Source of the DNA: Anaeramoeba ignava BMAN | Lineage: Eukaryota; Protista; Anaeramoebae | Assembly: GCA_028826165.1 (NCBI GenBank) | Contig: JAPDFW010000082.1 | Span: forward strand, 62,001-126,000 | DNA: 64,000 nucleotides | Direction of reading: 5' to 3' | Part shown: positions 9,299-56,483 of the stretch, in pieces | Position numbering within the stretch: the stretch's first letter is position 1 | Layout: each line of letters starts with the position of its first letter | Made by a program: the position numbers and the translations under genes | Notes under the pieces: model-generated | The model's database searches: none | What the model saw: the letters and a program-made list of their open reading frames with translations, nothing else | What the model was told of the DNA's origin: nothing

Positions 9299-11146
9299 AT
9301 GAATGAAATTTTATTTTTTGGTTCAAATCAAAAACCAAAACTTTTCAAAAATGAAACAAATAAAATAACAAAACCAATTCAATTTAAATTTGAAAATGAA
9401 AATGAAAATGAAAATGTAAAACAAAATCAAAATGAAAATGAAAAACAAATTAAACAAATTTCATCAGGTTTATTTTCAACAATTTTCCTTTTTAAAAATG
9501 GAAAAGCAATAGAATATTTAAAAGATTCAAATCAAAATCCTCAAAAAATCCAAATTGAAAATATTCAAAAAGTAACTGTTAGTTATCAAAATGAAGCTAT
9601 TTTAACAATAGAAGGAAATGTATTTGCCAAAGGAATAGATATTAATCCAAATAATCTAAAAGAATTTATCAATATTTCATCATTAATTAAAGATAAAAAT
9701 GATAGAATAATTCAAGATATTGTTTCTGGATATAGTTCAATTTATTTATTAACTTCAAATCAAAATGTTTATGGAATTGGTTCAAATAAATTAGCACAAC
9801 TTGGTTTTGATTCTGAAACACTTCCAAAAACAGAAAAACCAATTTTAATAATGAAAAATGTTTCTAAAATATTTTCAGGAAATTCTTCAGTTAATGTTTT
9901 TCTTTTAAATTCAAATCAAGAATTATTTGGATGCGGATTGAATGAATATGGCCAACTTGGATTAGGAGAATCAAGAAGAAGAGAAACAAAAATTCAAAAA
10001 TTAACCAAAATCAAAAATATTCCAAAAGGTAAAATAATTTATATTCAATCTGGAAATTTCCATTCAATAATGTTAATTGAAAATGAAAATGAAAACGAAA
10101 ATCCAAAAAGAAAACTTTATTCATGTGGCCGTTCTCAATATAATGGACTTGGTAAACCAAAAATTACTTATGAATTTACTGAAATCAAATCATCTTTATT
10201 TGAAAATGATGATATTCTTGATATTTCTGTTGGAGATAAACATACTTTGATTTTAACATCCAATTCAAAATTAATTGGATTTGGATATAATAATTTTGGT
10301 GAATTAGGAACTGGAGATACATATTGGAATCAATCAATTCCAATTCAAATTGAACTTCCTAAATTAAGATTTAATGAAAATATTTCCAATTATCATATTT
10401 CTTGTGGAGATTTTAGTTCATTTCTTTATTATTCTACTCCTTCTTTTTCCAATCTTGAAGAAGATTTGATAAAATTATTTAGAAGAAAAGAATTTTGTAA
10501 TATTTCATTTAAAACCGAAAATGGAGAAATAATTGAAGCTCATAAATTAATATTGAAATATAGATTAAATCAAAATGAAAATCAAATTGAAAAACTTCAA
10601 GAAATTATTTCAAATAAATCAATTAAAGAATCAAATCAAATATTTGAAATGATTTATTCAAACAGAATAATAAATCCAAAATTATATTCAGAAATTAAAG
10701 AAATTATAAATTCAAATGAAAAAATTGAAGAAACAATGAAAAGAATTTATTTAAATGAAAATGAAAATGAAAATGAAAAAGATTTTATAATTGAAAGAAA
10801 AGAAAAGCAATATAAATTTCCAAAATTAATATTAATAATGAGAAGTGAATTATATCGAGGAATGTTTTTATCTGTAACTGAAGATAAATCTAATAAAGTT
10901 ACAGATTATAGTGAATTAAGTAATAAATCATTTCAAATATTTGAATATTGGATTTATTCAAATCAAATTAAAGATGAAATTGAAATTACACAAGAAATAA
11001 TTGAAGAAATTAAAATTGGAATTGATTATTTTCAATTAAATCAAACAAATCCAAATTTATTTGATTTATTAATTAACAAATTTAATAACCAAAATTTAAT
11101 TCAAAATTCTAATCAAAAAAAGAAAGAAAATTGTTTAATATTTTAA
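9299..11146 (+). CDS. RCC1-repeat + BTB-like protein, paralog 1, with C-terminal CaaX (CLIF)
   Basis: RCC1 motifs (GCGLNEYGQLG, ISVGDKHTLIL..GFGYNNFGELG); BTB-like FCNISF..IEAHKLILKYR and second BTB-like KDFII..LILIMRSELYRGMF; ends KKKENCLIF. Confidence 0.9.
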   Translation: MNEILFFGSNQKPKLFKNETNKITKPIQFKFENENENENVKQNQNENEKQIKQISSGLFSTIFLFKNGKAIEYLKDSNQNPQKIQIENIQKVTVSYQNEAILTIEGNVFAKGIDINPNNLKEFINISSLIKDKNDRIIQDIVSGYSSIYLLTSNQNVYGIGSNKLAQLGFDSETLPKTEKPILIMKNVSKIFSGNSSVNVFLLNSNQELFGCGLNEYGQLGLGESRRRETKIQKLTKIKNIPKGKIIYIQSGNFHSIMLIENENENENPKRKLYSCGRSQYNGLGKPKITYEFTEIKSSLFENDDILDISVGDKHTLILTSNSKLIGFGYNNFGELGTGDTYWNQSIPIQIELPKLRFNENISNYHISCGDFSSFLYYSTPSFSNLEEDLIKLFRRKEFCNISFKTENGEIIEAHKLILKYRLNQNENQIEKLQEIISNKSIKESNQIFEMIYSNRIINPKLYSEIKEIINSNEKIEETMKRIYLNENENENEKDFIIERKEKQYKFPKLILIMRSELYRGMFLSVTEDKSNKVTDYSELSNKSFQIFEYWIYSNQIKDEIEITQEIIEEIKIGIDYFQLNQTNPNLFDLLINKFNNQNLIQNSNQKKKENCLIF

Positions 11147-11312
11147 ATAGAAATTAAAATTAAAATTAAAATAAAAATTAAAATTAAAATCAAATTAAAA
11201 ATTAAAATTAAAATTAAAATTAAATTTAAAATTAAAATTAAGATTAAAATTAAAATTAAAATTAAAATTTAAAATTCAAAAATCATTTTTTCATTTTTTT
11301 TCTTTTCAAAAA

Positions 11313-13094
11313 ATGAATGATTGTTTATTTTTTGGTGAAAATGAAAAACCAAAACTTTTCAAAAATGAACCAGATAAAATAACAAAACCAATTCAATTTA
11401 AATTTGAAAATGAAAATGAAAATGAAAATGAAAATGAAAAACAAATTAAACAAATTTCATCAGGTTTATTTTCAACAATTTTCCTTTTTAAAAATGGAAA
11501 AGCAATAGAATATTTAAATGATTCAAATGAAAATCCTGAAAAAATCCAAATTGAAGAAAATATTCAAAAAGTAACTGTTGGCGCTAACAATGAAGCTATT
11601 TTAACAATAGAAGGAAATGTATTTGCCAAAGGAAAATATATTAATCCACAAAATCTAAATGAATTTATCAATATTTCATCATTAATTGAAGATACAAATG
11701 ATAGAATAATTCAAGATGTTGTTTCTGGATACAGTTCAATTTATTTATTAACTTCAAATCAAAATGTTTACGGAATTGGTTTAAATTATTCTTCTCAACT
11801 TGGTTTTGATTCTAACACACTTGATAAAACAAAAAAACCAATTTTAATGATGAAAGATGTTTCTAAAATATTTTCAGGAAATTCTTCAAGTCATGTTTTT
11901 CTTTTAAATTCAAATCAAGAATTATTTGGATGCGGAAATAATGAATCTGGTCAACTTGGATTAGGAAAATCAAGAAGAAAAGAAACAGAAATCCAAAAAT
12001 TAACCAAAATCAAAAATATTCGAAAAGGCAAAATAATTGATATTCAATGTGGAATTAATCATTCAATAATGTTAATTGAAAATCAAAATCAAAATCCAAA
12101 AAGAAAACTTTATTCATGTGGAGGTTATGGATATAATGGACTTGAGAGATATGGAAACGATACTTACAAATTTACTGAAATCAAATCATCTTTATTTGAA
12201 AATGATAATATTATTGATTTTTCTTGTGGATATGAACATACTTTGATTTTAACATCCAATTCAAAATTAATTGGATTTGGATACAATTATTATGGTCAAT
12301 TAGGAACTGGAGATACATATTGGAATCAATCAATTCCAATTCAAATTGAACTTCCTAAATTAAGATTTAATGAAAATATTTCCAATTATCATCTTTCTTG
12401 TGGATATTACAGTTCATTTCTTTATTATTCTCCTCCTTCTTTTTCCAATCTTGAAGAAGATTTGATAAAACTATTTCAAAGAAAAGAATTTTGTAATATT
12501 TCATTTAAAACCGAAAATGGAGAAATAATTGAAGCTCATAAATTAATATTGAAATATAGATTAAATCAAAATGAAAATCAAATTGAAAAACTTCAAGAAA
12601 TTATTTCAAAAAAATCAATTAAAGAATCAAATCAAATATTTGAAATGATTTATTCAAACAGAATAATAAATCCAAAATTATATTCAGAAATTAAAGAAAT
12701 TATAAATTCAAATGAAAAAATTGAAGAAACAATGAAAAGAATTTATTTAAATGAAAATGAAAATGAAAATGAAAAAGATTTTATTATTGAAAGAAAAGAA
12801 AAGCAATATAAATTTCCAAAATTAATATTAATAATGAGAAGTGAATTATATCGAGGAATGTTTTTATCTGTAACAAATGATAAATCAAATAAAGTTACAG
12901 ATTATAGTGAATTAAGTAATAAATCATTTCAAATATTTGAATATTGGATTTATTCAAATCAAATTAAAGATGAAATTGAAATTACACAAGAAATAATTGA
13001 TGAGATAGAAAGAGGAATTGATTATTTTCAATTAAATCAAACAAATCCAAATTTATTTGATTTATTAATTAAAAAATTTAATAATCAAAATTAA
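11313..13094 (+). CDS. RCC1-repeat + BTB-like protein, paralog 2 (tandem duplicate, no CaaX)
   Basis: Colinear with 9299-11146; BTB half nearly identical; ends NNQN* at the start of an AAAATT array. Confidence 0.9.
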   Translation: MNDCLFFGENEKPKLFKNEPDKITKPIQFKFENENENENENEKQIKQISSGLFSTIFLFKNGKAIEYLNDSNENPEKIQIEENIQKVTVGANNEAILTIEGNVFAKGKYINPQNLNEFINISSLIEDTNDRIIQDVVSGYSSIYLLTSNQNVYGIGLNYSSQLGFDSNTLDKTKKPILMMKDVSKIFSGNSSSHVFLLNSNQELFGCGNNESGQLGLGKSRRKETEIQKLTKIKNIRKGKIIDIQCGINHSIMLIENQNQNPKRKLYSCGGYGYNGLERYGNDTYKFTEIKSSLFENDNIIDFSCGYEHTLILTSNSKLIGFGYNYYGQLGTGDTYWNQSIPIQIELPKLRFNENISNYHLSCGYYSSFLYYSPPSFSNLEEDLIKLFQRKEFCNISFKTENGEIIEAHKLILKYRLNQNENQIEKLQEIISKKSIKESNQIFEMIYSNRIINPKLYSEIKEIINSNEKIEETMKRIYLNENENENEKDFIIERKEKQYKFPKLILIMRSELYRGMFLSVTNDKSNKVTDYSELSNKSFQIFEYWIYSNQIKDEIEITQEIIDEIERGIDYFQLNQTNPNLFDLLIKKFNNQN

Positions 13095-34755: not shown

Positions 34756-35475
34756 TTAGTTGTTTTTTTGATTTTTTGGTTTAAGACTGAATCGATCTTT
34801 TGTTAATTGATGTTTTGATTCAGTCTTTTTTTCTTTTTCATCTTTTTGATTATCCTTTTTTTCTTTTTCTTTTTGATTATCCTTTTTTTTTTGATTATCC
34901 TTTTGTTCTTTATCTTTTTGTTCTTTTTCTTTTTGTTCTTTTTCTTGTTTTTGTTTTTCTTGTTTTTGTTTTTCTAAAATCTGACGAGTATAAGGAAGAA
35001 GTCCACCAGCATCTCTAATTCTTAGAATCTCATCAGGAATTTTTGGGAAAGTGAATTTTTTTTCAGAAACTGTCACAATTCCATTTTCCAAATCAAGTGA
35101 AACTTTTGCTCCCTTTTTATATTCATCAACAGCTTCAGGACATTCGACAAGTATTAAACCTTGATTAATTGAAGCTCTGTAAAAAATTCTCGCGAATCCT
35201 TTACCTATTATTGCTTGTATTCCAACACTTCTGAGCCCTAAAGCTGGTTGTTCTCTTGATGATCCACATCCAAAATTTTTGCCAACAAACATAATGTCAC
35301 CTGGTTTGACATTGACAGTGAAAGTTGAATCAAGATCTTCTAAAAGATGTGGTCGAATTTCTTGAACTGTTGAGCATGTGTAAGTGTATTTACCTGGAAA
35401 GAGCATATCAGTATTAATGTTACTGTCAGGATAATACCAAATGTTAATGTCTGATGTTTGTTCTTTATTTTCCAT
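34756..35475 (-). CDS. leuD: 3-isopropylmalate dehydratase/homoaconitase small subunit with K/E/Q-rich tail
   Basis: NINTDMLFPG, GKNFGCGSSREQP, FARIFYR, AGGL. Confidence 0.9.
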   Translation of the reverse strand: MENKEQTSDINIWYYPDSNINTDMLFPGKYTYTCSTVQEIRPHLLEDLDSTFTVNVKPGDIMFVGKNFGCGSSREQPALGLRSVGIQAIIGKGFARIFYRASINQGLILVECPEAVDEYKKGAKVSLDLENGIVTVSEKKFTFPKIPDEILRIRDAGGLLPYTRQILEKQKQEKQKQEKEQKEKEQKDKEQKDNQKKKDNQKEKEKKDNQKDEKEKKTESKHQLTKDRFSLKPKNQKNN

Positions 35476-35583
35476 TAATGTTATTTATTATTTTAATGTT
35501 GTTTTTGTTTTTTTGTTTTGTTTTTTTTTTTTGATCTTATTTTTTTGATCTTATGTTTTTTGCAATTATTTTTTTCTTTGCAA

Positions 35584-36885
35584 TTATTTCTTTTCCTTCT
35601 CAGTCAAAGATTGAAGAGGATATTTTCTTGGATCTGTGATCACACCTGTAATTGCAGTAGCAGCAACAGCTGCAGGACTTGCAAGATAGATTTCTGAGTC
35701 TTTGCATCCCATTCTGCCTTTGAAATTTCTATTTGCAGTTGATAAGCACTTCTCTTTTGGAGCAAGTGCACCTAGATGAGCACCTAAACAAGGTCCACAA
35801 CCAGGAGGTAAAATGACAGCACCAGCTTCAACTAAAATATCGATGCTTCCGTTTTTGAGTGCTAATTGATACTCTGCTCTTGAAGAGGGAGCAACAAGAA
35901 ATCGAGTTGATTCGTGCACTTTGTGGCCTTTTATAATTTGAGCTGCAATCAAAAGATCGTCGCTTCTTCCGTTTGTGCATGTTCCCAAAAAGCACTGATC
36001 AATAGGAATTCCTTCCACTTCTGTAATATTTTTGACGTTATCAACGGAGTGCGGACATGCAACAACAGGCAGAATTTCTGAAAGATCGTATTCCAATTCT
36101 TTGACATATTTTGCATTTTGATCTGCCCAAATAGGTTCATATTCGGATCTTTTAATGCCTATGTTTTTGAGATAGTCATGTGTTTTTTGGTCAACTTGGA
36201 AAACTGCTCCTTTGCCATCCATTTCAATTGCCATGTTTGCAAGTGTGAATCGCTCGCTTATTGAAAGCATTTCTGCGCCGTGGAATTCCAAAAACATGTA
36301 TGAAGCACCTGAAGAAGTAAGATCGCGAACAATTGACAGAATCAAATCTTTTGCGTAAATCTGAGTTTTGAAGTAATTTTTCAACGATATCTTGATCGAT
36401 TGCGGAACTTTAAGCCATGTCTTGCCCATAAGTGTTAATGCCGATGATTCTGTGCGGTCAACACCTGTAGAAAATGCTCCCATAACTCCATATGAGCATG
36501 TGTGAGAATCTGAGCCAACAATTAATTGTCCTGGCAATGCAAGTCCCTTTTCGACAACAACTTGATGACAAACACCAGTTCCAATATCGTAAAAGTTTTT
36601 GACTCCAAAGCGTTTGACGAATTCACGAACTTTCTTGTGTTCATTTGCTGTTTTTTCGTTTGCTGCTGGTGAAACATGATCAAGCACAATTATGTTTAAA
36701 TCTTTTGAGTAAATGCCAAATTCATTAAGCTCATCAGAGATTTTTCCGATAATGGCAGCTGTGTTGTCGTGAGTAAGGAGATGTTCGGGATAGACAGTAA
36801 CGATTTGTCCTGGAACAACTGATTCCAAACCAGCTTTTTTAGCAAGTATTTTTTCTGCAAAGGTCATTGGTTGTTTCTTTTCCAT
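35584..36885 (-). CDS. leuC: 3-isopropylmalate dehydratase/homoaconitase large subunit (LeuC/HacA type)
   Basis: MTFAEKIL, HDN, LDH, GVCHQ, GSDSHTCSYG, ANMAIE, GTCTNGR, GCGPCLG, STANRNFKGRMG, LASP. Confidence 0.93.
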   Translation of the reverse strand: MEKKQPMTFAEKILAKKAGLESVVPGQIVTVYPEHLLTHDNTAAIIGKISDELNEFGIYSKDLNIIVLDHVSPAANEKTANEHKKVREFVKRFGVKNFYDIGTGVCHQVVVEKGLALPGQLIVGSDSHTCSYGVMGAFSTGVDRTESSALTLMGKTWLKVPQSIKISLKNYFKTQIYAKDLILSIVRDLTSSGASYMFLEFHGAEMLSISERFTLANMAIEMDGKGAVFQVDQKTHDYLKNIGIKRSEYEPIWADQNAKYVKELEYDLSEILPVVACPHSVDNVKNITEVEGIPIDQCFLGTCTNGRSDDLLIAAQIIKGHKVHESTRFLVAPSSRAEYQLALKNGSIDILVEAGAVILPPGCGPCLGAHLGALAPKEKCLSTANRNFKGRMGCKDSEIYLASPAAVAATAITGVITDPRKYPLQSLTEKEKK

Positions 36886-36957
36886 CTTATTTCAAATTTG
36901 TTGCTTTGTTTTAATTATTTCTTCTTTTCTTTTCTTTATAAAAAAAAAAAGGTGAAT

Positions 36958-38883
36958 CTACCAATTTAAGGATTGCGATTTTACTCCAGAAACAAGTAAA
37001 CCTCCGCGATGATAAATTTCAAGCTGAGTTTTGGAGCAGGGATTTGCTTTGACAACAACATTTGTTCTTTTATTGAGAATGTTGCCATTAATCAAATCAA
37101 CAGAAATAACATCAGCATCACTAATATCAAGTTCTTTCAAATCCAAGACAGGAAGAGTAAGAATGGGTAACCCTGCATTAATAGCATTACGTTCATAGAT
37201 CGCACCAAAGGACTGTGCGATAATAACACTAATTCCAAGATTGATAAAGCAATCAACTGCTTGTTGACGAGAAGATCCGCATCCGAAGTTTTTGCCTGTA
37301 AGAATAATATCTCCTTTTTTAGCGTTTTTGGAGAAATCGGTCCAACCCTCTAAATTTCCGAAAGCATATTGACCCATTTGGTTAATGTCTGTGATTGTTA
37401 AATGTTTGTTGTGGAAAATCATGTCAGTATCAATGTTATCTTTTGGTATAACCCAAACACGACCAGTGAATTGTGTTGGTTTGGCAATTTCTTTCAATTC
37501 TGAATCCTGTGTTTGTATTTGTTGTTGTGTTTGTGTTTGTGTTTGTGTTTGTGGTTGTGCACAATTTTCGCATTGAGATTGAATATTATCAATCTGTCGG
37601 ATATTTTTTTCTGGTTCTGGGAAAAGTATAGGCTTTTCGAGAATATTATCAACAGTTGTCATAACACCAGAAATAGCAGAAGCAATTACAGTTTGGGGTG
37701 AACAAAGAAAAACTTTTCCCTTGCCTTGTTTTCCAATAAAGTTTCTGTTTCCTGTGCTGAGTGTAATCTCGTTCACTCCAGTCATACCTACTTGACCAGC
37801 AGCGCAAGAAGAGCATCCTGGATTACTCACAAGAGCGCCTGCCTCTACAAATATCTGGATAATTCCCTCGCGAAGACAGCGCAGATATATTGCCTGTGTC
37901 GATGGAACAACTTTGAGAATTACTCCTGGAGCAACTTGATTTCCCTTGATAATATCAGCTGCTAATTTAAGATCCTCGTAGCGTCCATTTGTGCATGATC
38001 CAAGAATGCAAGAATCAATTTTTGTGTTGAATAAATCTTTGACTGCAACAACATCTTCGGGATGGCCTGCACGTGAGATCAAAGGTCCGATATTTGTGAT
38101 ATCAATATCAAATTCCTTCTCATATTTTGCGTTAGGATCAGCCTCGAAAAGCGAGAGATCGAATTCTTTTGGATCGAAACCAAGCTCTTTGAAAATGGAT
38201 TCGTTTGGAGGGAAAAGAAGGATAATTGCGCCCATTTCTGTTGCCATTGAAGCAATTGTTATTCTGGAAGACAGATTAAGCGTATCAATATACTCTCCAT
38301 AAATTTCTGCGGAATAACCAAGCAGGGAGTTTGCACCAAGAACTTGGAGAATGCGAAGAGTAACATCTTTAGGAGTTGCGTATTTACCGGGCATTCCTTT
38401 GAGATTAACCTTGACGGAATGAGGGATTTTGAACCATACTTTGCCTCTAGTCCATGCTGCAGCGATATCCATGTCTCCCATACCTTGTCCAAATGCGCAT
38501 ATTGCGCCCATAATGTTTGCATGAGAATCTGTTGAGACGAAAACATCTCCTGGCTTGACAACTTTCTCATCAATCACAATATGTGTTCCAATACCCTTGT
38601 CGATATCAAAGACCTTAATCCCTCTCTCGCGTGCAAATACACGGCATATTTGCTGGTTATTTGCGTAGTTCATATCGCTTCCTGTGGGGTTGCAATCAAA
38701 TGTGAAGAATGTTCTTTTGTTGTCTTCAATGGTGAGTCCGTTATTACGGATATTTTTCACAACATTTGCTCCTGCAAAATCTCTTGCTGCGCGAACATCC
38801 ACAAAAACATCACAAATTTCACCTGGGATGACCTTTTGGTCTGTTTTTTTACTTAAAATTTTCTCGATTATTGTTTGGCTCAT
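36958..38883 (-). CDS. Fused aconitase-family large+small subunit (LeuC-LeuD fusion), divergent substrate motifs
   Basis: MSQTIIEKIL..STDSHAN..GSCTNGR..CSSCAAG..STGNRNFIGKQG, (QT)n linker, then DNIDTDMIF..NFGCGSSRQQA..FGAIYERNAIN..GGLL. The frame stays open upstream of this Met to 39111. Confidence 0.9.
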   Translation of the reverse strand: MSQTIIEKILSKKTDQKVIPGEICDVFVDVRAARDFAGANVVKNIRNNGLTIEDNKRTFFTFDCNPTGSDMNYANNQQICRVFARERGIKVFDIDKGIGTHIVIDEKVVKPGDVFVSTDSHANIMGAICAFGQGMGDMDIAAAWTRGKVWFKIPHSVKVNLKGMPGKYATPKDVTLRILQVLGANSLLGYSAEIYGEYIDTLNLSSRITIASMATEMGAIILLFPPNESIFKELGFDPKEFDLSLFEADPNAKYEKEFDIDITNIGPLISRAGHPEDVVAVKDLFNTKIDSCILGSCTNGRYEDLKLAADIIKGNQVAPGVILKVVPSTQAIYLRCLREGIIQIFVEAGALVSNPGCSSCAAGQVGMTGVNEITLSTGNRNFIGKQGKGKVFLCSPQTVIASAISGVMTTVDNILEKPILFPEPEKNIRQIDNIQSQCENCAQPQTQTQTQTQQQIQTQDSELKEIAKPTQFTGRVWVIPKDNIDTDMIFHNKHLTITDINQMGQYAFGNLEGWTDFSKNAKKGDIILTGKNFGCGSSRQQAVDCFINLGISVIIAQSFGAIYERNAINAGLPILTLPVLDLKELDISDADVISVDLINGNILNKRTNVVVKANPCSKTQLEIYHRGGLLVSGVKSQSLNW

Positions 38884-39566
38884 TGCCAATTTGTGTTTGT
38901 TTTTCTTGTTTTTGTGAAGTGTGTTTGAGTGTGAGCTTGAAGAAATGCCATTTTCGGCAGAGAGTAAACATTCATTGCAGTGTAATGTTGTTGGTTGATT
39001 CGGGTTGCGCAAGGGAATCGTGCTGGATGATAAAGCATAAAGGATAATTTCTTGCCAGTTTCCTGCTGAATTTTTTCGAATTTCGATTTGGCTTTCAAAG
39101 AAAGATTTTTTCTAAACTGGAAATTCTTTCTTGATTCAAAACGTAATTTGGACATGAATGCCTCTGTCAACTTAATAAATCTTCCTGAAGTGCGTTTTAT
39201 GTAACGAATATTGTGGTTGTTATTTGAGTGTAAAAATGCCTTTGATTCACCTCCAAGTTGCTGCATTTCAGTGAGTTTTCTTTTACGTAATTCCGGAATT
39301 GAGAAATTAGAGGAATGATTGTTTTTCTTTAGATGGGAAATGTTTGAGATTTCTTGAAGAGAATTTGGATCACATTGAGCAGCTTCTAGATAATTCAACG
39401 GAGCTTGCGGTGGTGGTGGCGCAAGCTTACGTTTTTGTGGGTTTTCATCAATTTGAGACATGATAATCTCCTTGTTTCCGAAGAAAACGGAAACAAATTT
39501 GATGTTTTGCTCATGTTTTGGTTTGAGAATGGGCACTTCTGTGTTTTTTGTTGCAATTGGTTCCAT
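38880..39566 (-). CDS. Hypothetical basic protein (228 aa) whose TGA overlaps the ATG of the LeuC-LeuD fusion
   Basis: Non-repetitive ORF with coding-like composition; frame open further upstream to ~39707; no recognisable domain. Confidence 0.45.
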   Translation of the reverse strand: MEPIATKNTEVPILKPKHEQNIKFVSVFFGNKEIIMSQIDENPQKRKLAPPPPQAPLNYLEAAQCDPNSLQEISNISHLKKNNHSSNFSIPELRKRKLTEMQQLGGESKAFLHSNNNHNIRYIKRTSGRFIKLTEAFMSKLRFESRKNFQFRKNLSLKAKSKFEKIQQETGKKLSFMLYHPARFPCATRINQQHYTAMNVYSLPKMAFLQAHTQTHFTKTRKTNTNWQ

Positions 39567-52490: not shown

Positions 52491-55400
52491 ATGAATAATT
52501 TTTTTGCTGATTTTACTTTAAAAAATAAAGATTTCATTATCAAACATTTAGAATCAGGAGTTGATGTTAATTCACAAGATGTATAAATAACTCATTCATA
52601 TAACAAATTTATATAACAAATTTATAATTAAATTTATAAACAAATTTATAACTAAATTTATAAACAAATTTATAACTAAATTTATAAACAAATTTATAAA
52701 CAAATTTATAAACAAAATTATAATTAAATTTATAATTAAATTTATAATTAAATTTATAATTAAATTTATAAACAATTTTATAATCAAATTTATAATTAAA
52801 TTTATAATTAAATTTATAATTAAATTTATAATTAAATTTATAAACAAATTTATAAACAAATTTATAAACAAATTTATAAACAAATTTATAATTAAATTTA
52901 TAATTAAATTTATAATTAAATTTATATCAAAATTTATAATTATATTTATAATTAAATTTATAATTAAATTTATAAACAAATTTATAATTAAATTTATAAT
53001 TAAATTTATAATTAAATTTATAAACAAATTTATAAACAAATTTATAATTAAAATTATAATTAAATTTATAATTAAATTTATAATTAAAGTTATAATTAAA
53101 TTTATAATTAAATTTATAAAACAAATTTATAATTAAATTTATAAACAATTTTATAATCAAATTTATAATTAAAATTATAATTAAATTTATAATTAAATTT
53201 ATAAACAAATTTATAATTATATTTATAATTATATTTATAATTAAATTTATAAACAAATTTATAAACAAATTTATAAACAAATTTATAATTAAATTTATAA
53301 CTAAATTTATAAACAAATTTATAAACAAAATTATAAACAAAATTATAAACAAAATTATAAACAAATTTATAATTAAATTTATAATTATATTTATATTTAG
53401 AATGTAAAAGATCTTATTATTTTTTAATTAAATAAATAAATTATTTTTTTTATTATTAGAATGTATTTACATTTTTTTTTATGAAATATTAAAATTTGAA
53501 TTAAAAATCATTTTTATATTGAAATTAGGGAAATACTGCATTACATATAGTTTGTAATAAACACCCAAATTTTGAAATTATTCAAACCCTTCTTTCTTAT
53601 GGAGCTGATCCAAATATTCGAAATGTGAAAAAATTTCAAATAAAAACAAATTAAAACAAATTAATAAAATATTAATAAAATAGAAAGTAAAAAAATCCTC
53701 TTTAAAATTCATTCCATTTTCTTAATTATTTTTTTTTGTAATTAAGACTGTAATTTTAATTTTCAATTTCATAAATGAATTTCAATTTTATAAATGAATT
53801 TCAATTTTATAAATGAATTTCAATTTAAATCTAAAATTAAGAATCATATTCCATTACATTATGCTTGTAGAAGTTTTTCAAGTGAAAAAGTTATTGAAAA
53901 ATTAATTGAAGTTAAATCTGATCTTCTTGCAATAAATGTATAAAAAAGAAAAGAAAAGAAAAGAAAATAAAGGAATTTCTTTCTTAAATTCAAAATAATT
54001 CATTTCAAATTTTTTTTTGTAGAATGTAATAAATATTTAATTCAATTTTGAATTGGAAATTTAAATTGGAAATTTTTTAGTTGGTATTTTTTTTTTTTGA
54101 ATTAATTTTGGATTGTAAAAATTTTAATAAGTTGAAAATATATATAAATAATTAGGGAAATACACCATTACATGTCGCAGCTTTTAATCATTTTATGACT
54201 GATAAAATATTCCAATTATTACTTTCTTCTGGTTCAAATGCAAACCTTCAAAATGTAGAAAAAATTAAAATGAAGAAAAATTAAATTTATTTGAAAAAAA
54301 TTTAAAATGAAAAAAAAAAAAGATCGTAAACAATTTTCTTTTAAAATGGAAATATTATTTAATTTAAAAAAATTTTTATTTATTTAGAATGTAAATATTT
54401 TAATTTTAAAATGTTTGAATTTTTTAGAAATTGAATATTATTTATATATAATAGAAAGAAACTCCTTTGCATATTGCTAGTCAATCACAAAATGAACAAC
54501 AACCTGTTAAAGTTATTATATCTGCTATTAATGATATAAATATTAGAGATGTTTGTTTTAAAATTGCTTTTTTTTTTCTTAATCATTCAATTTTTATAAA
54601 AATAAATTTATTGTTTTAAAAAATTAGAAAGTAAAATTTTAATCATTTTTAATTTTTCTAAATTAATTTTTCTTATAAAAAAAAATAGAATGTTTGTTTA
54701 TGATATTTTTTTCAATCATTTAGAAAAATTTATTATTTATTATTTATTTATTGAATAGAATAAAACTCCACTTCATTTTGCTTGTTTGAATAAAAAATGT
54801 GAAATTGCTTTTGATTTACTTGAAGCAGGTGCTGATCCAAATGCTTTAGATGTGAGTAGAATGAATATTTATTTATTTATTTATTTCAAAAAAAATTATC
54901 TATTTAATTTAACATTTTCACAAACAAAACAAAACAAATTTTTTTTAGAATGTATTTCTGTTTTTTTTTCAAAAAAAAAACAATTTTAATTGAATTTTAA
55001 TTAAATTTTTTAGATGGTATTTTTTTTTTAATTTTTTTTTAAAAAATTTAATTCAATTCAAATAATAAATTTTTTAGGGAAATACTCCTATTCATTTTGC
55101 AATTAAATTTAATCAAAATCCTAAATTAATTGTTGGATTAATTCAAAGAGGAGCAAGAATTAATATTCCAAATGTAAAAAACAAAATCTTTTTTTTTCAA
55201 TCAATTTAAAAATCTAAAATTTTAATTTAAAAATTTAGAAAGTAATTTATGAAAATTCATTTCCCCAAAAAAATATAAATATTCTATTTTTATTCTTTTA
55301 AATTTATTTATTTTTTAGTTAGTAAAATTTTTTGGATAAAATTTCTTCATTTTTTTTTAATTCTAAAAAATTTCTTTTCATTTTGTTTTTTTTTTAAAAA

Positions 55401-56483
55401 ATAATCAGTTTTGGACTCCATTTCATTTTATTTGTAATTTCAAACAAGATCCTCAATTAATTAAGTATTTTCTTGGCATAGGAGCAAATACAACTATTGA
55501 AACAGTAAATATATAAAACGAATTCTTTTTTTAAAAAAATAAAAAGAACTGAAAAAATTTTTTTAGCATGTAATTTGAATTTTAAGTTACTTTTAAAAAT
55601 GATTTGATTTATAAATAAATTTTTTTTTAGAATGTAAATATTTCATCAAAAATTTTTAAACTGAAAATGATTTAAACTGAAAAATTTTTAAATTCAGAAA
55701 AAAAAAGCAACAGATTTTATTCAAGATGAAATGATTTCTCGAGGAATTGAACTTTATAATAAATTTTGCGAAGATTTTCAAAACTTATTCAAATCAGAAA
55801 TTTTAAGCGATATTGAAATTAAATGTTGTGATTATAATTTTCAAGTTCATAATTTGATTTTAAAAGAAAGATTAACAAAATTTGGATATAAAAGTTTGTT
55901 TTTGGAATCTGAAAAAATTAATCAAGAAGAAATGAATTCGTTTTTAGAGTTTATTTATACTGGACAAGTATTGAATGATAATGAATATTTTAATTGTGAA
56001 AAAGTATTTAGAAAAATTGGAATGTTTAATTTTCACAATCAAATTGGAAAAAAAAACTTGTTATTTACAATGAAAAAATTATTTTTGGATGAAAATTCAA
56101 AAGATATTGAATTTGTTGATTCGAAAAATCAAGTTATTTGTAAAGCTCATAAATTTATTTTGGCAGCAAGAACTAAAAAATATTTTGATTTTTTTAAAGA
56201 AGAAAAAGAAAAATATCAGGAATCTTTTAACATTAAAAATCAATTTGTTGAAGAAAGTCAAACTGATAGTGAAGCTTTTAAAGCTTTTGTTTATTTTTTA
56301 TATCTTGATAAATTCCCAAAAAATTTCCAAAATTTTACTTTAATTCAAGATTTAATGAATCTTTCAGGATTTTATAATCTTTTTCAAAACGAATTTTTTA
56401 TTATTCGTGTTCATTCTCATTTTGCAAAAATTAAAAAGAATCAAAAGAAAAAATTAAGAAGAATTAAAAAGAAACAAAATTAA
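52491..56483 (+). CDS. Ankyrin-repeat (7 full repeats) + tandem BTB protein, 25 exons including 16 single-codon microexons
   Basis: Exon 52491-52580; ankyrin exons 53529-53624, 53842-53937, 54156-54254, 54455-54550, 54759-54851, 55078-55173, 55409-55504 (GNTALH, NHIPLH, GNTPLH, KETPLH, NKTPLH, GNTPIH, FWTPFH); final exon 55698-56483 with BTB motifs (SDIEI..FQVHNLILKER; KDIEF..KAHKFILAAR). All phase 0. Confidence 0.9.
52600..53398 (+). repeat. 12-bp (AATTTATAATTA/AATTTATAAACA)n array in intron 1 of the ankyrin-BTB gene
   Basis: Read directly; a related unit recurs at 57700-58090 and 63445-63858. Confidence 0.9.
53401..55633 (+). other. Sixteen 3-nt (single-codon) microexons, two per ankyrin junction
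   Basis: AG|NNN|GT starting at 53401 AAT, 53460 AAT, 53684 AAA, 53747 ACT, 54023 AAT, 54081 TTG, 54323 ATC, 54388 AAT, 54628 AAA, 54689 AAT, 54949 AAT, 55014 ATG, 55239 AAA, 55319 TTA, 55567 CAT, 55631 AAT. Confidence 0.85.

What the first reader, a model, noticed from the sequence alone, without database searches (positions are those of the whole stretch)
52491..55697. Ankyrin gene in which the two variable hairpin residues of every repeat are each encoded by their own 3-nt exon
Seen: at all 8 junctions between ankyrin exons there are two AG|NNN|GT units separated by 55-97-nt introns (one intron is repeat-expanded). They encode N,N; K,T; N,L; I,N; K,N; N,M; K,L; H,N, and none is a stop. Repeat exons are 93-99 nt and end at the hairpin D/N/T; the next begins at the G-x-T-P-L-H position. 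Including both codons gives the canonical D-x-x-G-x-T-P-L-H spacing (SQD-N-N-GNTALH, ALD-N-M-GNTPIH). G is rare in these introns, so an 8/8 double occurrence is unlikely by chance. Established: these x-x positions are target-contacting residues, among those randomised in designed ankyrin (DARPin) libraries. Inference: this is a systematic single-codon exon architecture with ~300-bp genomic periodicity that gene predictors and read aligners would miss.
Basis: partly seen in the sequence, partly recalled or inferred. Interest (0 to 1): 0.95.

Follow-up and report, generated by a model that had tools for sequence, protein, structure and literature searches.

The report
One-codon exons in ankyrin loops
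In the anaerobic amoeba Anaeramoeba, this gene and roughly a hundred relatives put the two loop-tip amino acids of each ankyrin repeat on separate three-base exons; transcript-derived proteins of sister genes contain these residues, while the public gene models leave them out.

Summary
Confirmed. This Anaeramoeba ignava ankyrin-BTB gene has two AG|NNN|GT units at each of 8 junctions (shuffle p about 1e-26). The deposited model KAJ5072152.1 (515 aa) is the 531-aa reading minus exactly these 16 residues. Genome-wide, paired 3-nt units give 261 matches against 2 (4-nt), 2 (6-nt) and 30 (2-nt, mostly tandem repeats); stops are depleted. Transcriptome-derived proteins of three sister genes carry the extra residues, and 16 of 18 match genomic units in order; one pair was not located. 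A. flamelloides homologues have the units where their models are short. Some loops hold about 10 single-codon exons. Every transcript model seen includes the codons, so combinatorial skipping is unshown. Closest precedent: codon-sized microexons of Tuber melanosporum NACHT-ankyrin genes, hence a new variant of a known kind. The scan noted this layout before on other DNA of this genome, once with transcript support.

The parts
52491..52580 (+). Exon 1: ATG and N-terminal capping repeat, ends at the hairpin Asp
   Evidence: matches the N-terminus of the deposited model P0001
52581..53400 (+). Intron 1, 820 nt, expanded by an AT-rich tandem repeat
53401..53462 (+). Single-codon exons N (53401-3) and N (53460-2)
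53529..53624 (+). Ankyrin repeat exon, 96 nt
   Evidence: Pfam Ank E 6e-9
53684..53749 (+). Single-codon exons K (53684-6) and T (53747-9)
53842..53937 (+). Ankyrin repeat exon, 96 nt
54023..54083 (+). Single-codon exons N (54023-5) and L (54081-3)
54156..54254 (+). Ankyrin repeat exon, 99 nt
54323..54390 (+). Single-codon exons I (54323-5) and N (54388-90).
54455..54550 (+). Ankyrin repeat exon, 96 nt
54628..54691 (+). Single-codon exons K (54628-30) and N (54689-91)
54759..54851 (+). Ankyrin repeat exon, 93 nt
   Evidence: Pfam Ank E 8e-7
54949..55016 (+). Single-codon exons N (54949-51) and M (55014-16)
55078..55173 (+). Ankyrin repeat exon, 96 nt
   Evidence: Pfam Ank E 8e-5
55239..55321 (+). 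Single-codon exons K (55239-41) and L (55319-21)
55409..55504 (+). Ankyrin repeat exon, 96 nt
55567..55633 (+). Single-codon exons H (55567-9) and N (55631-3)
55698..56483 (+). Last exon: final partial repeat plus BTB/POZ region, to the stop codon
   Evidence: Pfam BTB E 1e-8, two stretches; 100% identical to residues 255-515 of P0001

Best explanation
The 3-nt units are real exons that are normally included. Each ankyrin repeat is one 93-99-nt exon from G-x-T-P-L-H to the hairpin D/N, followed by two phase-0 single-codon exons for the two hairpin-tip residues. The product here is a 531-aa ankyrin-BTB protein with canonical 33-35-residue repeats. SHOWN: the units; their enrichment and stop depletion; inclusion in transcript-derived proteins of three sister genes; presence in A. 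flamelloides DNA; omission from public models. INFERRED: inclusion at this locus; splicing by intron definition, where each short AT-rich GT-AG intron is removed on its own so the codon joins a longer neighbour; spread by duplication of the roughly 300-bp repeat unit and of whole genes; gain or loss of an intron-plus-codon unit as a frame-safe way to change loop length (0 to about 10 codons per loop across paralogues); and a role as a substrate-binding adaptor of Cullin-3 type, from the ankyrin plus BTB domains alone.
For: Genome-wide paired-unit pattern: 3-nt 261, 4-nt 2, 6-nt 2, 2-nt 30, mostly tandem repeats. In 26 ankyrin spacers not selected by that pattern: 47 3-nt units, at most 5 of any other length, 0 stops. 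In the wider set, 1 stop in 180 against about 15 expected, p about 4e-6. Length compensation: the N-to-T spacer is 7 in 65 of 68 intron-less repeats of this genome; in split genes it is 7 with the units at 27 of 35 auto-anchored junctions (38 of 42 after correcting the anchor by eye), and junctions whose large exon carries one more residue have one unit. Transcriptome protein P0093 versus genome model P0008: two extra residues at each of 7 junctions. In G000:C56 the predicted codons lie in AG|NNN|GT units in order at 6 of the 7 (gene located). P0091 K,S matches one unique place. P0072 has a single exact spliced alignment to L045, and it needs two 3-nt exons that the NCBI model lacks. A. flamelloides L066 and L067 have units where the deposited protein is short, and the short introns at complete junctions hold none. 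The AlphaFold model of P0093 is an ankyrin solenoid, pLDDT 91, with the residues in the inter-repeat loops.
Against: One of the seven P0093 junctions (D,A) was not found by the pattern search. Two second codons are only partly visible in the printed matches. Transcript evidence comes from assembled proteins, which show the major path only. A few junctions in paralogues (L040/L041) have no unit and a short hairpin, so the residues are not always required.
Confidence: 0.88

Rival explanations
1. The exons are real and are also skipped in combination, so each gene yields many binding-surface variants, as reported for Tuber nank genes.
For: Every unit is phase 0, so any subset keeps the frame. x1 and x2 are highly variable (3.2 and 3.5 bits). 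Loops of about 10 single-codon exons differ completely between paralogues C2a and C20. There is a precedent in Tuber.
Against: All transcript-derived proteins seen (P0093, P0091, P0072, P0200) include the residues, and no skipped transcript model sits in those clusters. Loop length is held at the canonical value, which argues for a fixed product. Skipping one codon of a two-residue turn probably destabilises the repeat (inference).
Confidence: 0.2
2. The units are not exons at this locus; each spacer is one intron of about 200 nt and the deposited 515-aa model is right.
For: The public model joins the repeat exons directly. No RNA was seen for this locus. A few paralogous junctions really lack the units.
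Against: Joint p about 1e-26 for chance. The same kind of public model is contradicted by transcripts in sister genes. The skipped form would give 31-33-residue repeats with a 5-residue spacer, never seen in 68 intron-less repeats.
Confidence: 0.04
3. The units are recursive-splicing or other intron-internal signals, not coding exons.
For: AG followed closely by GT is the signature of recursive splice sites (own knowledge).
Against: Recursive sites have zero bases between AG and GT; here k = 0 is absent from the unselected spacers and k = 3 dominates. The triplets avoid stops and appear as amino acids in transcript-derived proteins.
Confidence: 0.02

Closest known systems
Tuber melanosporum nank (NACHT-ANK) genes (Iotti et al. 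2012, PMID 22289772; not held, known here through PMC4986451, PMC10197012, PMC13449251, PMC3689799)
   Same: An expanded ankyrin-containing family with tens of codon-sized (3-bp) microexons, described as diversifying the sensor domain.
   Different: Here the partner domain is BTB, not NACHT, and the host is a metamonad. The exons sit at a fixed place (after the hairpin D/N, usually two per repeat). The transcripts seen include them, whereas Tuber is reported to splice them alternatively. Whether the Tuber exons occupy the same hairpin positions could not be checked.
Brown-algal ROCO-LRR and NB-ARC-TPR genes (PMC3341825, PMC11378527)
   Same: One repeat per exon, expanded families, candidate recognition proteins.
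   Different: The modules there are whole repeats that are shuffled or alternatively spliced; the abstracts describe no single-codon exons.
Isolated 1-3-nt microexons in plants, flies and mammals (PMC8831610, PMC7392893; cytohesin-1 PMC6314551)
   Same: Real exons of 3 nt or less that annotation and aligners miss.
   Different: Those are scattered single events; here they are consecutive, periodic and spread over about a hundred loci (estimate).
Ankyrin-BTB proteins and DARPin scaffolds
   Same: Fold: best PDB match is a DARPin, TM 0.78 (model of sister protein P0093). The hairpin x-x positions are among those randomised in DARPin libraries (own knowledge; PMC8229355 confirms only that randomised positions lie on the concave binding surface).
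   Different: The gene structure, not the protein, is what is unusual. Cullin-3 binding was not tested.

Membership tests
Ankyrin-repeat protein | 33-residue repeats with TPLH motif matching Pfam Ank | tested here: met
   Three exons tested singly pass the PF00023 cut-off; sister protein folds as an ankyrin solenoid
BTB-domain protein | PF00651 match above cut-off | tested here: met
   35.8 bits against 20.5, two stretches
Cullin-3 substrate adaptor | Binds Cullin-3 through BTB and recruits substrates | not testable with these tools
   Inferred from domain architecture only
Coding microexon | Flanked by canonical GT-AG introns of normal length, frame kept | tested here: met
Coding microexon | Present in mature mRNA, sister genes | tested here: met
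   Transcriptome-derived proteins P0093, P0091, P0072 against genome
Coding microexon | Present in mature mRNA, this locus | tested here: inconclusive
Tuber nank-type microexon system | NACHT domain with ankyrin repeats | tested here: not met
   Only Ank and BTB families found in the exons tested and in P0008/P0093
Tuber nank-type microexon system | Many codon-sized exons in an expanded ankyrin family | tested here: met
Tuber nank-type microexon system | Extensive alternative splicing of the microexons | tested here: inconclusive
   Only inclusion forms seen, in assembled proteins that show the major path; no raw reads

The most novel reading that the evidence does not exclude
The single-codon exons form a diversification system for a family of about a hundred ankyrin-BTB recognition proteins: loop length and sequence change codon by codon through gain and loss of intron-plus-codon units, and the long loops are spliced in combination to give a repertoire from one gene, in an amoeba that houses bacterial symbionts.
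Probability: 0.2. Interest if true: 0.92.

Novelty: new variant of a known kind. Interest (0 to 1): 0.78.

Why it matters
It shows a spliceosome routinely joining consecutive one-codon exons, in loops of up to about 10, in a whole gene family and in two species whose orthologues are only 37% identical (PMC11550330). That gives a natural test bed for the lower limit of exon size and for the order of intron removal. It means the public Anaeramoeba ankyrin proteins are wrong at the loop tips of their binding face. It also offers a second, probably independent case beside the truffle of codon-sized exons in ankyrin genes, which makes the link between this gene layout and recognition diversity testable.

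Tried and rejected
After that I asked genome search for counts only; L061 and L062 came from a call sent in the same batch. The joined spliced model was not sent to any search tool; exons were searched by reference. The search for homologous proteins with the BTB exon found nothing (length window). The look-up of encoding contigs had no record for P0008. The tool's reversed-pattern control is uninformative here because the reversed pattern resembles coding repeats, so spacer-length controls were used. Intron similarity within the window gene is weak (top z 4.4 among 253 pairs), so no recent unit duplication is visible there. Three A. flamelloides homologues (L063-L065) have phase-0 introns at or near the hairpin but no convincing units. 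No paper holds both 'Anaeramoeba' and 'microexon'; the Iotti paper is not held.

Full report
Observation. Joining exon 1 (52491-52580), seven repeat exons of 93-99 nt, the 16 units and a last exon (55698-56483) gives 531 codons without a stop. All 24 introns are GT-AG and phase 0; 23 are 55-97 nt and one is 820 nt. No unit of 1, 2, 4, 5 or 6 nt occurs in these spacers, and the joint shuffle probability of two units at all 8 junctions is about 1e-26.

Identity. The last exon is identical to the C-terminus of KAJ5072152.1 of Anaeramoeba ignava, 515 aa. That is 531 minus 16, and its repeats join directly, so the public model omits every unit. Repeat exons tested singly match Pfam Ank and the last exon matches BTB. 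The joined model was not sent to any search tool.

Genome-wide controls. A strict pattern for two consecutive units gives 261 matches with a 3-nt spacer, 2 with 4 nt, 2 with 6 nt and 30 with 2 nt, the last mostly in tandem repeats. The first 100 rows fall in about 45 loci, so roughly a hundred loci is my estimate. All 14 distinct loci fetched from that search are ankyrin genes. In 26 spacers that the pattern did not select there are 47 3-nt units, at most 5 of any other length, and no stop. In the wider set 1 of 180 triplets is a stop against about 15 expected.

Length compensation. In intron-less ankyrin genes of the same genome the spacer from the conserved N to the T of TPLH is 7 residues in 65 of 68 repeats. 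In split genes it is 7 once the units are counted: 27 of 35 junctions by automatic anchoring, 38 of 42 after I corrected the anchor by eye. Without the units it is mostly 5. Where the large exon carries one more residue there is one unit, not two. At last junctions, where the next exon starts at or just before the T position, there are four.

Transcript evidence. EukProt holds proteins from A. ignava transcript assemblies (TransDecoder headers). P0093 has two more residues than the genome model P0008 at each of 7 junctions: EF, ND, IR, DA, RG, NN, KS. Its gene lies on G000:C56, minus strand. A pattern built from E,F and the next exon matched once in the genome, at C56:321929. N,D and I plus a compatible partial codon follow at 321609 and 321293; R,G, N plus a partial codon, and K,S follow at 320060, 319776 and 319248. 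The D,A pair was not found by the pattern. P0091 has K,S beyond P0004, and that pair matches one place. P0072 aligns to locus L045 in exactly one way when any exon length and phase are allowed, and that way uses two 3-nt exons absent from the NCBI model. In all, 16 units were located: 14 fully determined, 2 partly visible, none in conflict. P0200 also has K,T beyond P0047, not located in the genome.

Second species. In A. flamelloides, L066 has E and N units 104 and 109 nt apart exactly where the deposited protein is two residues short. L067 has an I,K pair and further units with GTAAG donors at short junctions. Three other homologues have phase-0 introns at or near the same hairpin site, mostly with complete loops, and no convincing units. 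The layout thus appears to predate the split of two species with 37% orthologue identity. This rests on DNA only.

Range of the architecture. Loops vary from no unit to about 10 consecutive ones; one gene on C2 has two 10-codon loops and its paralogue on C20 has different ones. A triple-unit pattern gives 386 matches, among them long arrays on C1 in which nearly identical introns alternate with changing codons. That suggests tandem duplication of an intron-plus-codon unit.

Mechanism. Most likely the codons are included constitutively, each short AT-rich intron being recognised on its own (inference). Phase 0 throughout lets a unit be gained, lost or skipped without a frameshift. The model of P0093 places the residues in the inter-repeat loops of a normal solenoid. 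x1 and x2 are variable (3.2 and 3.5 bits), but so are several positions within the large exons. An adaptor role of Cullin-3 type is inferred from the domains only. Combinatorial skipping is possible but unshown: every transcript model seen includes the residues.

Comparison and novelty. Codon-sized microexons in ankyrin-containing genes are reported for the Tuber melanosporum nank family, with alternative splicing (PMC4986451, PMC10197012, PMC13449251, PMC3689799; the primary paper is not held). An earlier scan note gave me that lead. The present case lacks NACHT, has a fixed position in the repeat, and so far shows inclusion only. It is not a member of that family but resembles it in gene layout. 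No searched paper reports it in Anaeramoeba. The scan has noted it on other DNA of this genome. Verdict: real, a new variant of a known kind, interest 0.78.

Noticed in passing
window 3504 down to about 2300, minus strand: A second ankyrin gene in this window with seven 3-nt units (3349; 3108, 3053; 2795, 2735; 2478, 2409), followed by a long C-terminal region not examined.
   Followed up: partly
G000:C1:409311-413129, C1:942332-942792, C1:1058079-1073173 (minus strand): Long arrays of near-identical introns alternating with variable single codons; the last two are rich in I, M, L and G codons. Host genes not read.
   Followed up: no
L034-L039 (G000:C2:5602-10186) and L051 (C20:70384-73545): Paralogous ankyrin genes whose loops are built from up to about 10 consecutive single-codon exons with unrelated sequences.
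   Followed up: partly
P0200 versus P0047; G000:C57:614290-614700, C76:414250-414659, C45:435, C123:165062: The transcript-derived protein P0200 has an N-terminus mapping to C57/C76 and a C-terminus equal to P0047, whose repeat exon appears to lie on C45 or C123. Chimeric assembly or recombinant allele; unresolved.
   Followed up: partly
L040/L041 (G000:C2:418451-422052): Several junctions have one intron, no unit and a hairpin two residues short, so units can be lost.
   Followed up: partly
L061 (G000:C82:712348-715491) and L067:8576-8581: Occasional 6-nt (two-codon) exons at the same junctions.
   Followed up: partly
window 34756-39012, minus strand: Three adjacent intron-less ORFs that look like isopropylmalate isomerase / aconitase-family subunits (by eye from the translations); GC is higher than the surroundings, possibly a bacterial-type cluster.
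   Followed up: no
window 9299-13094, plus strand: Two tandem, similar intron-less genes that look like RCC1-repeat plus BTB proteins (by eye).
   Followed up: no
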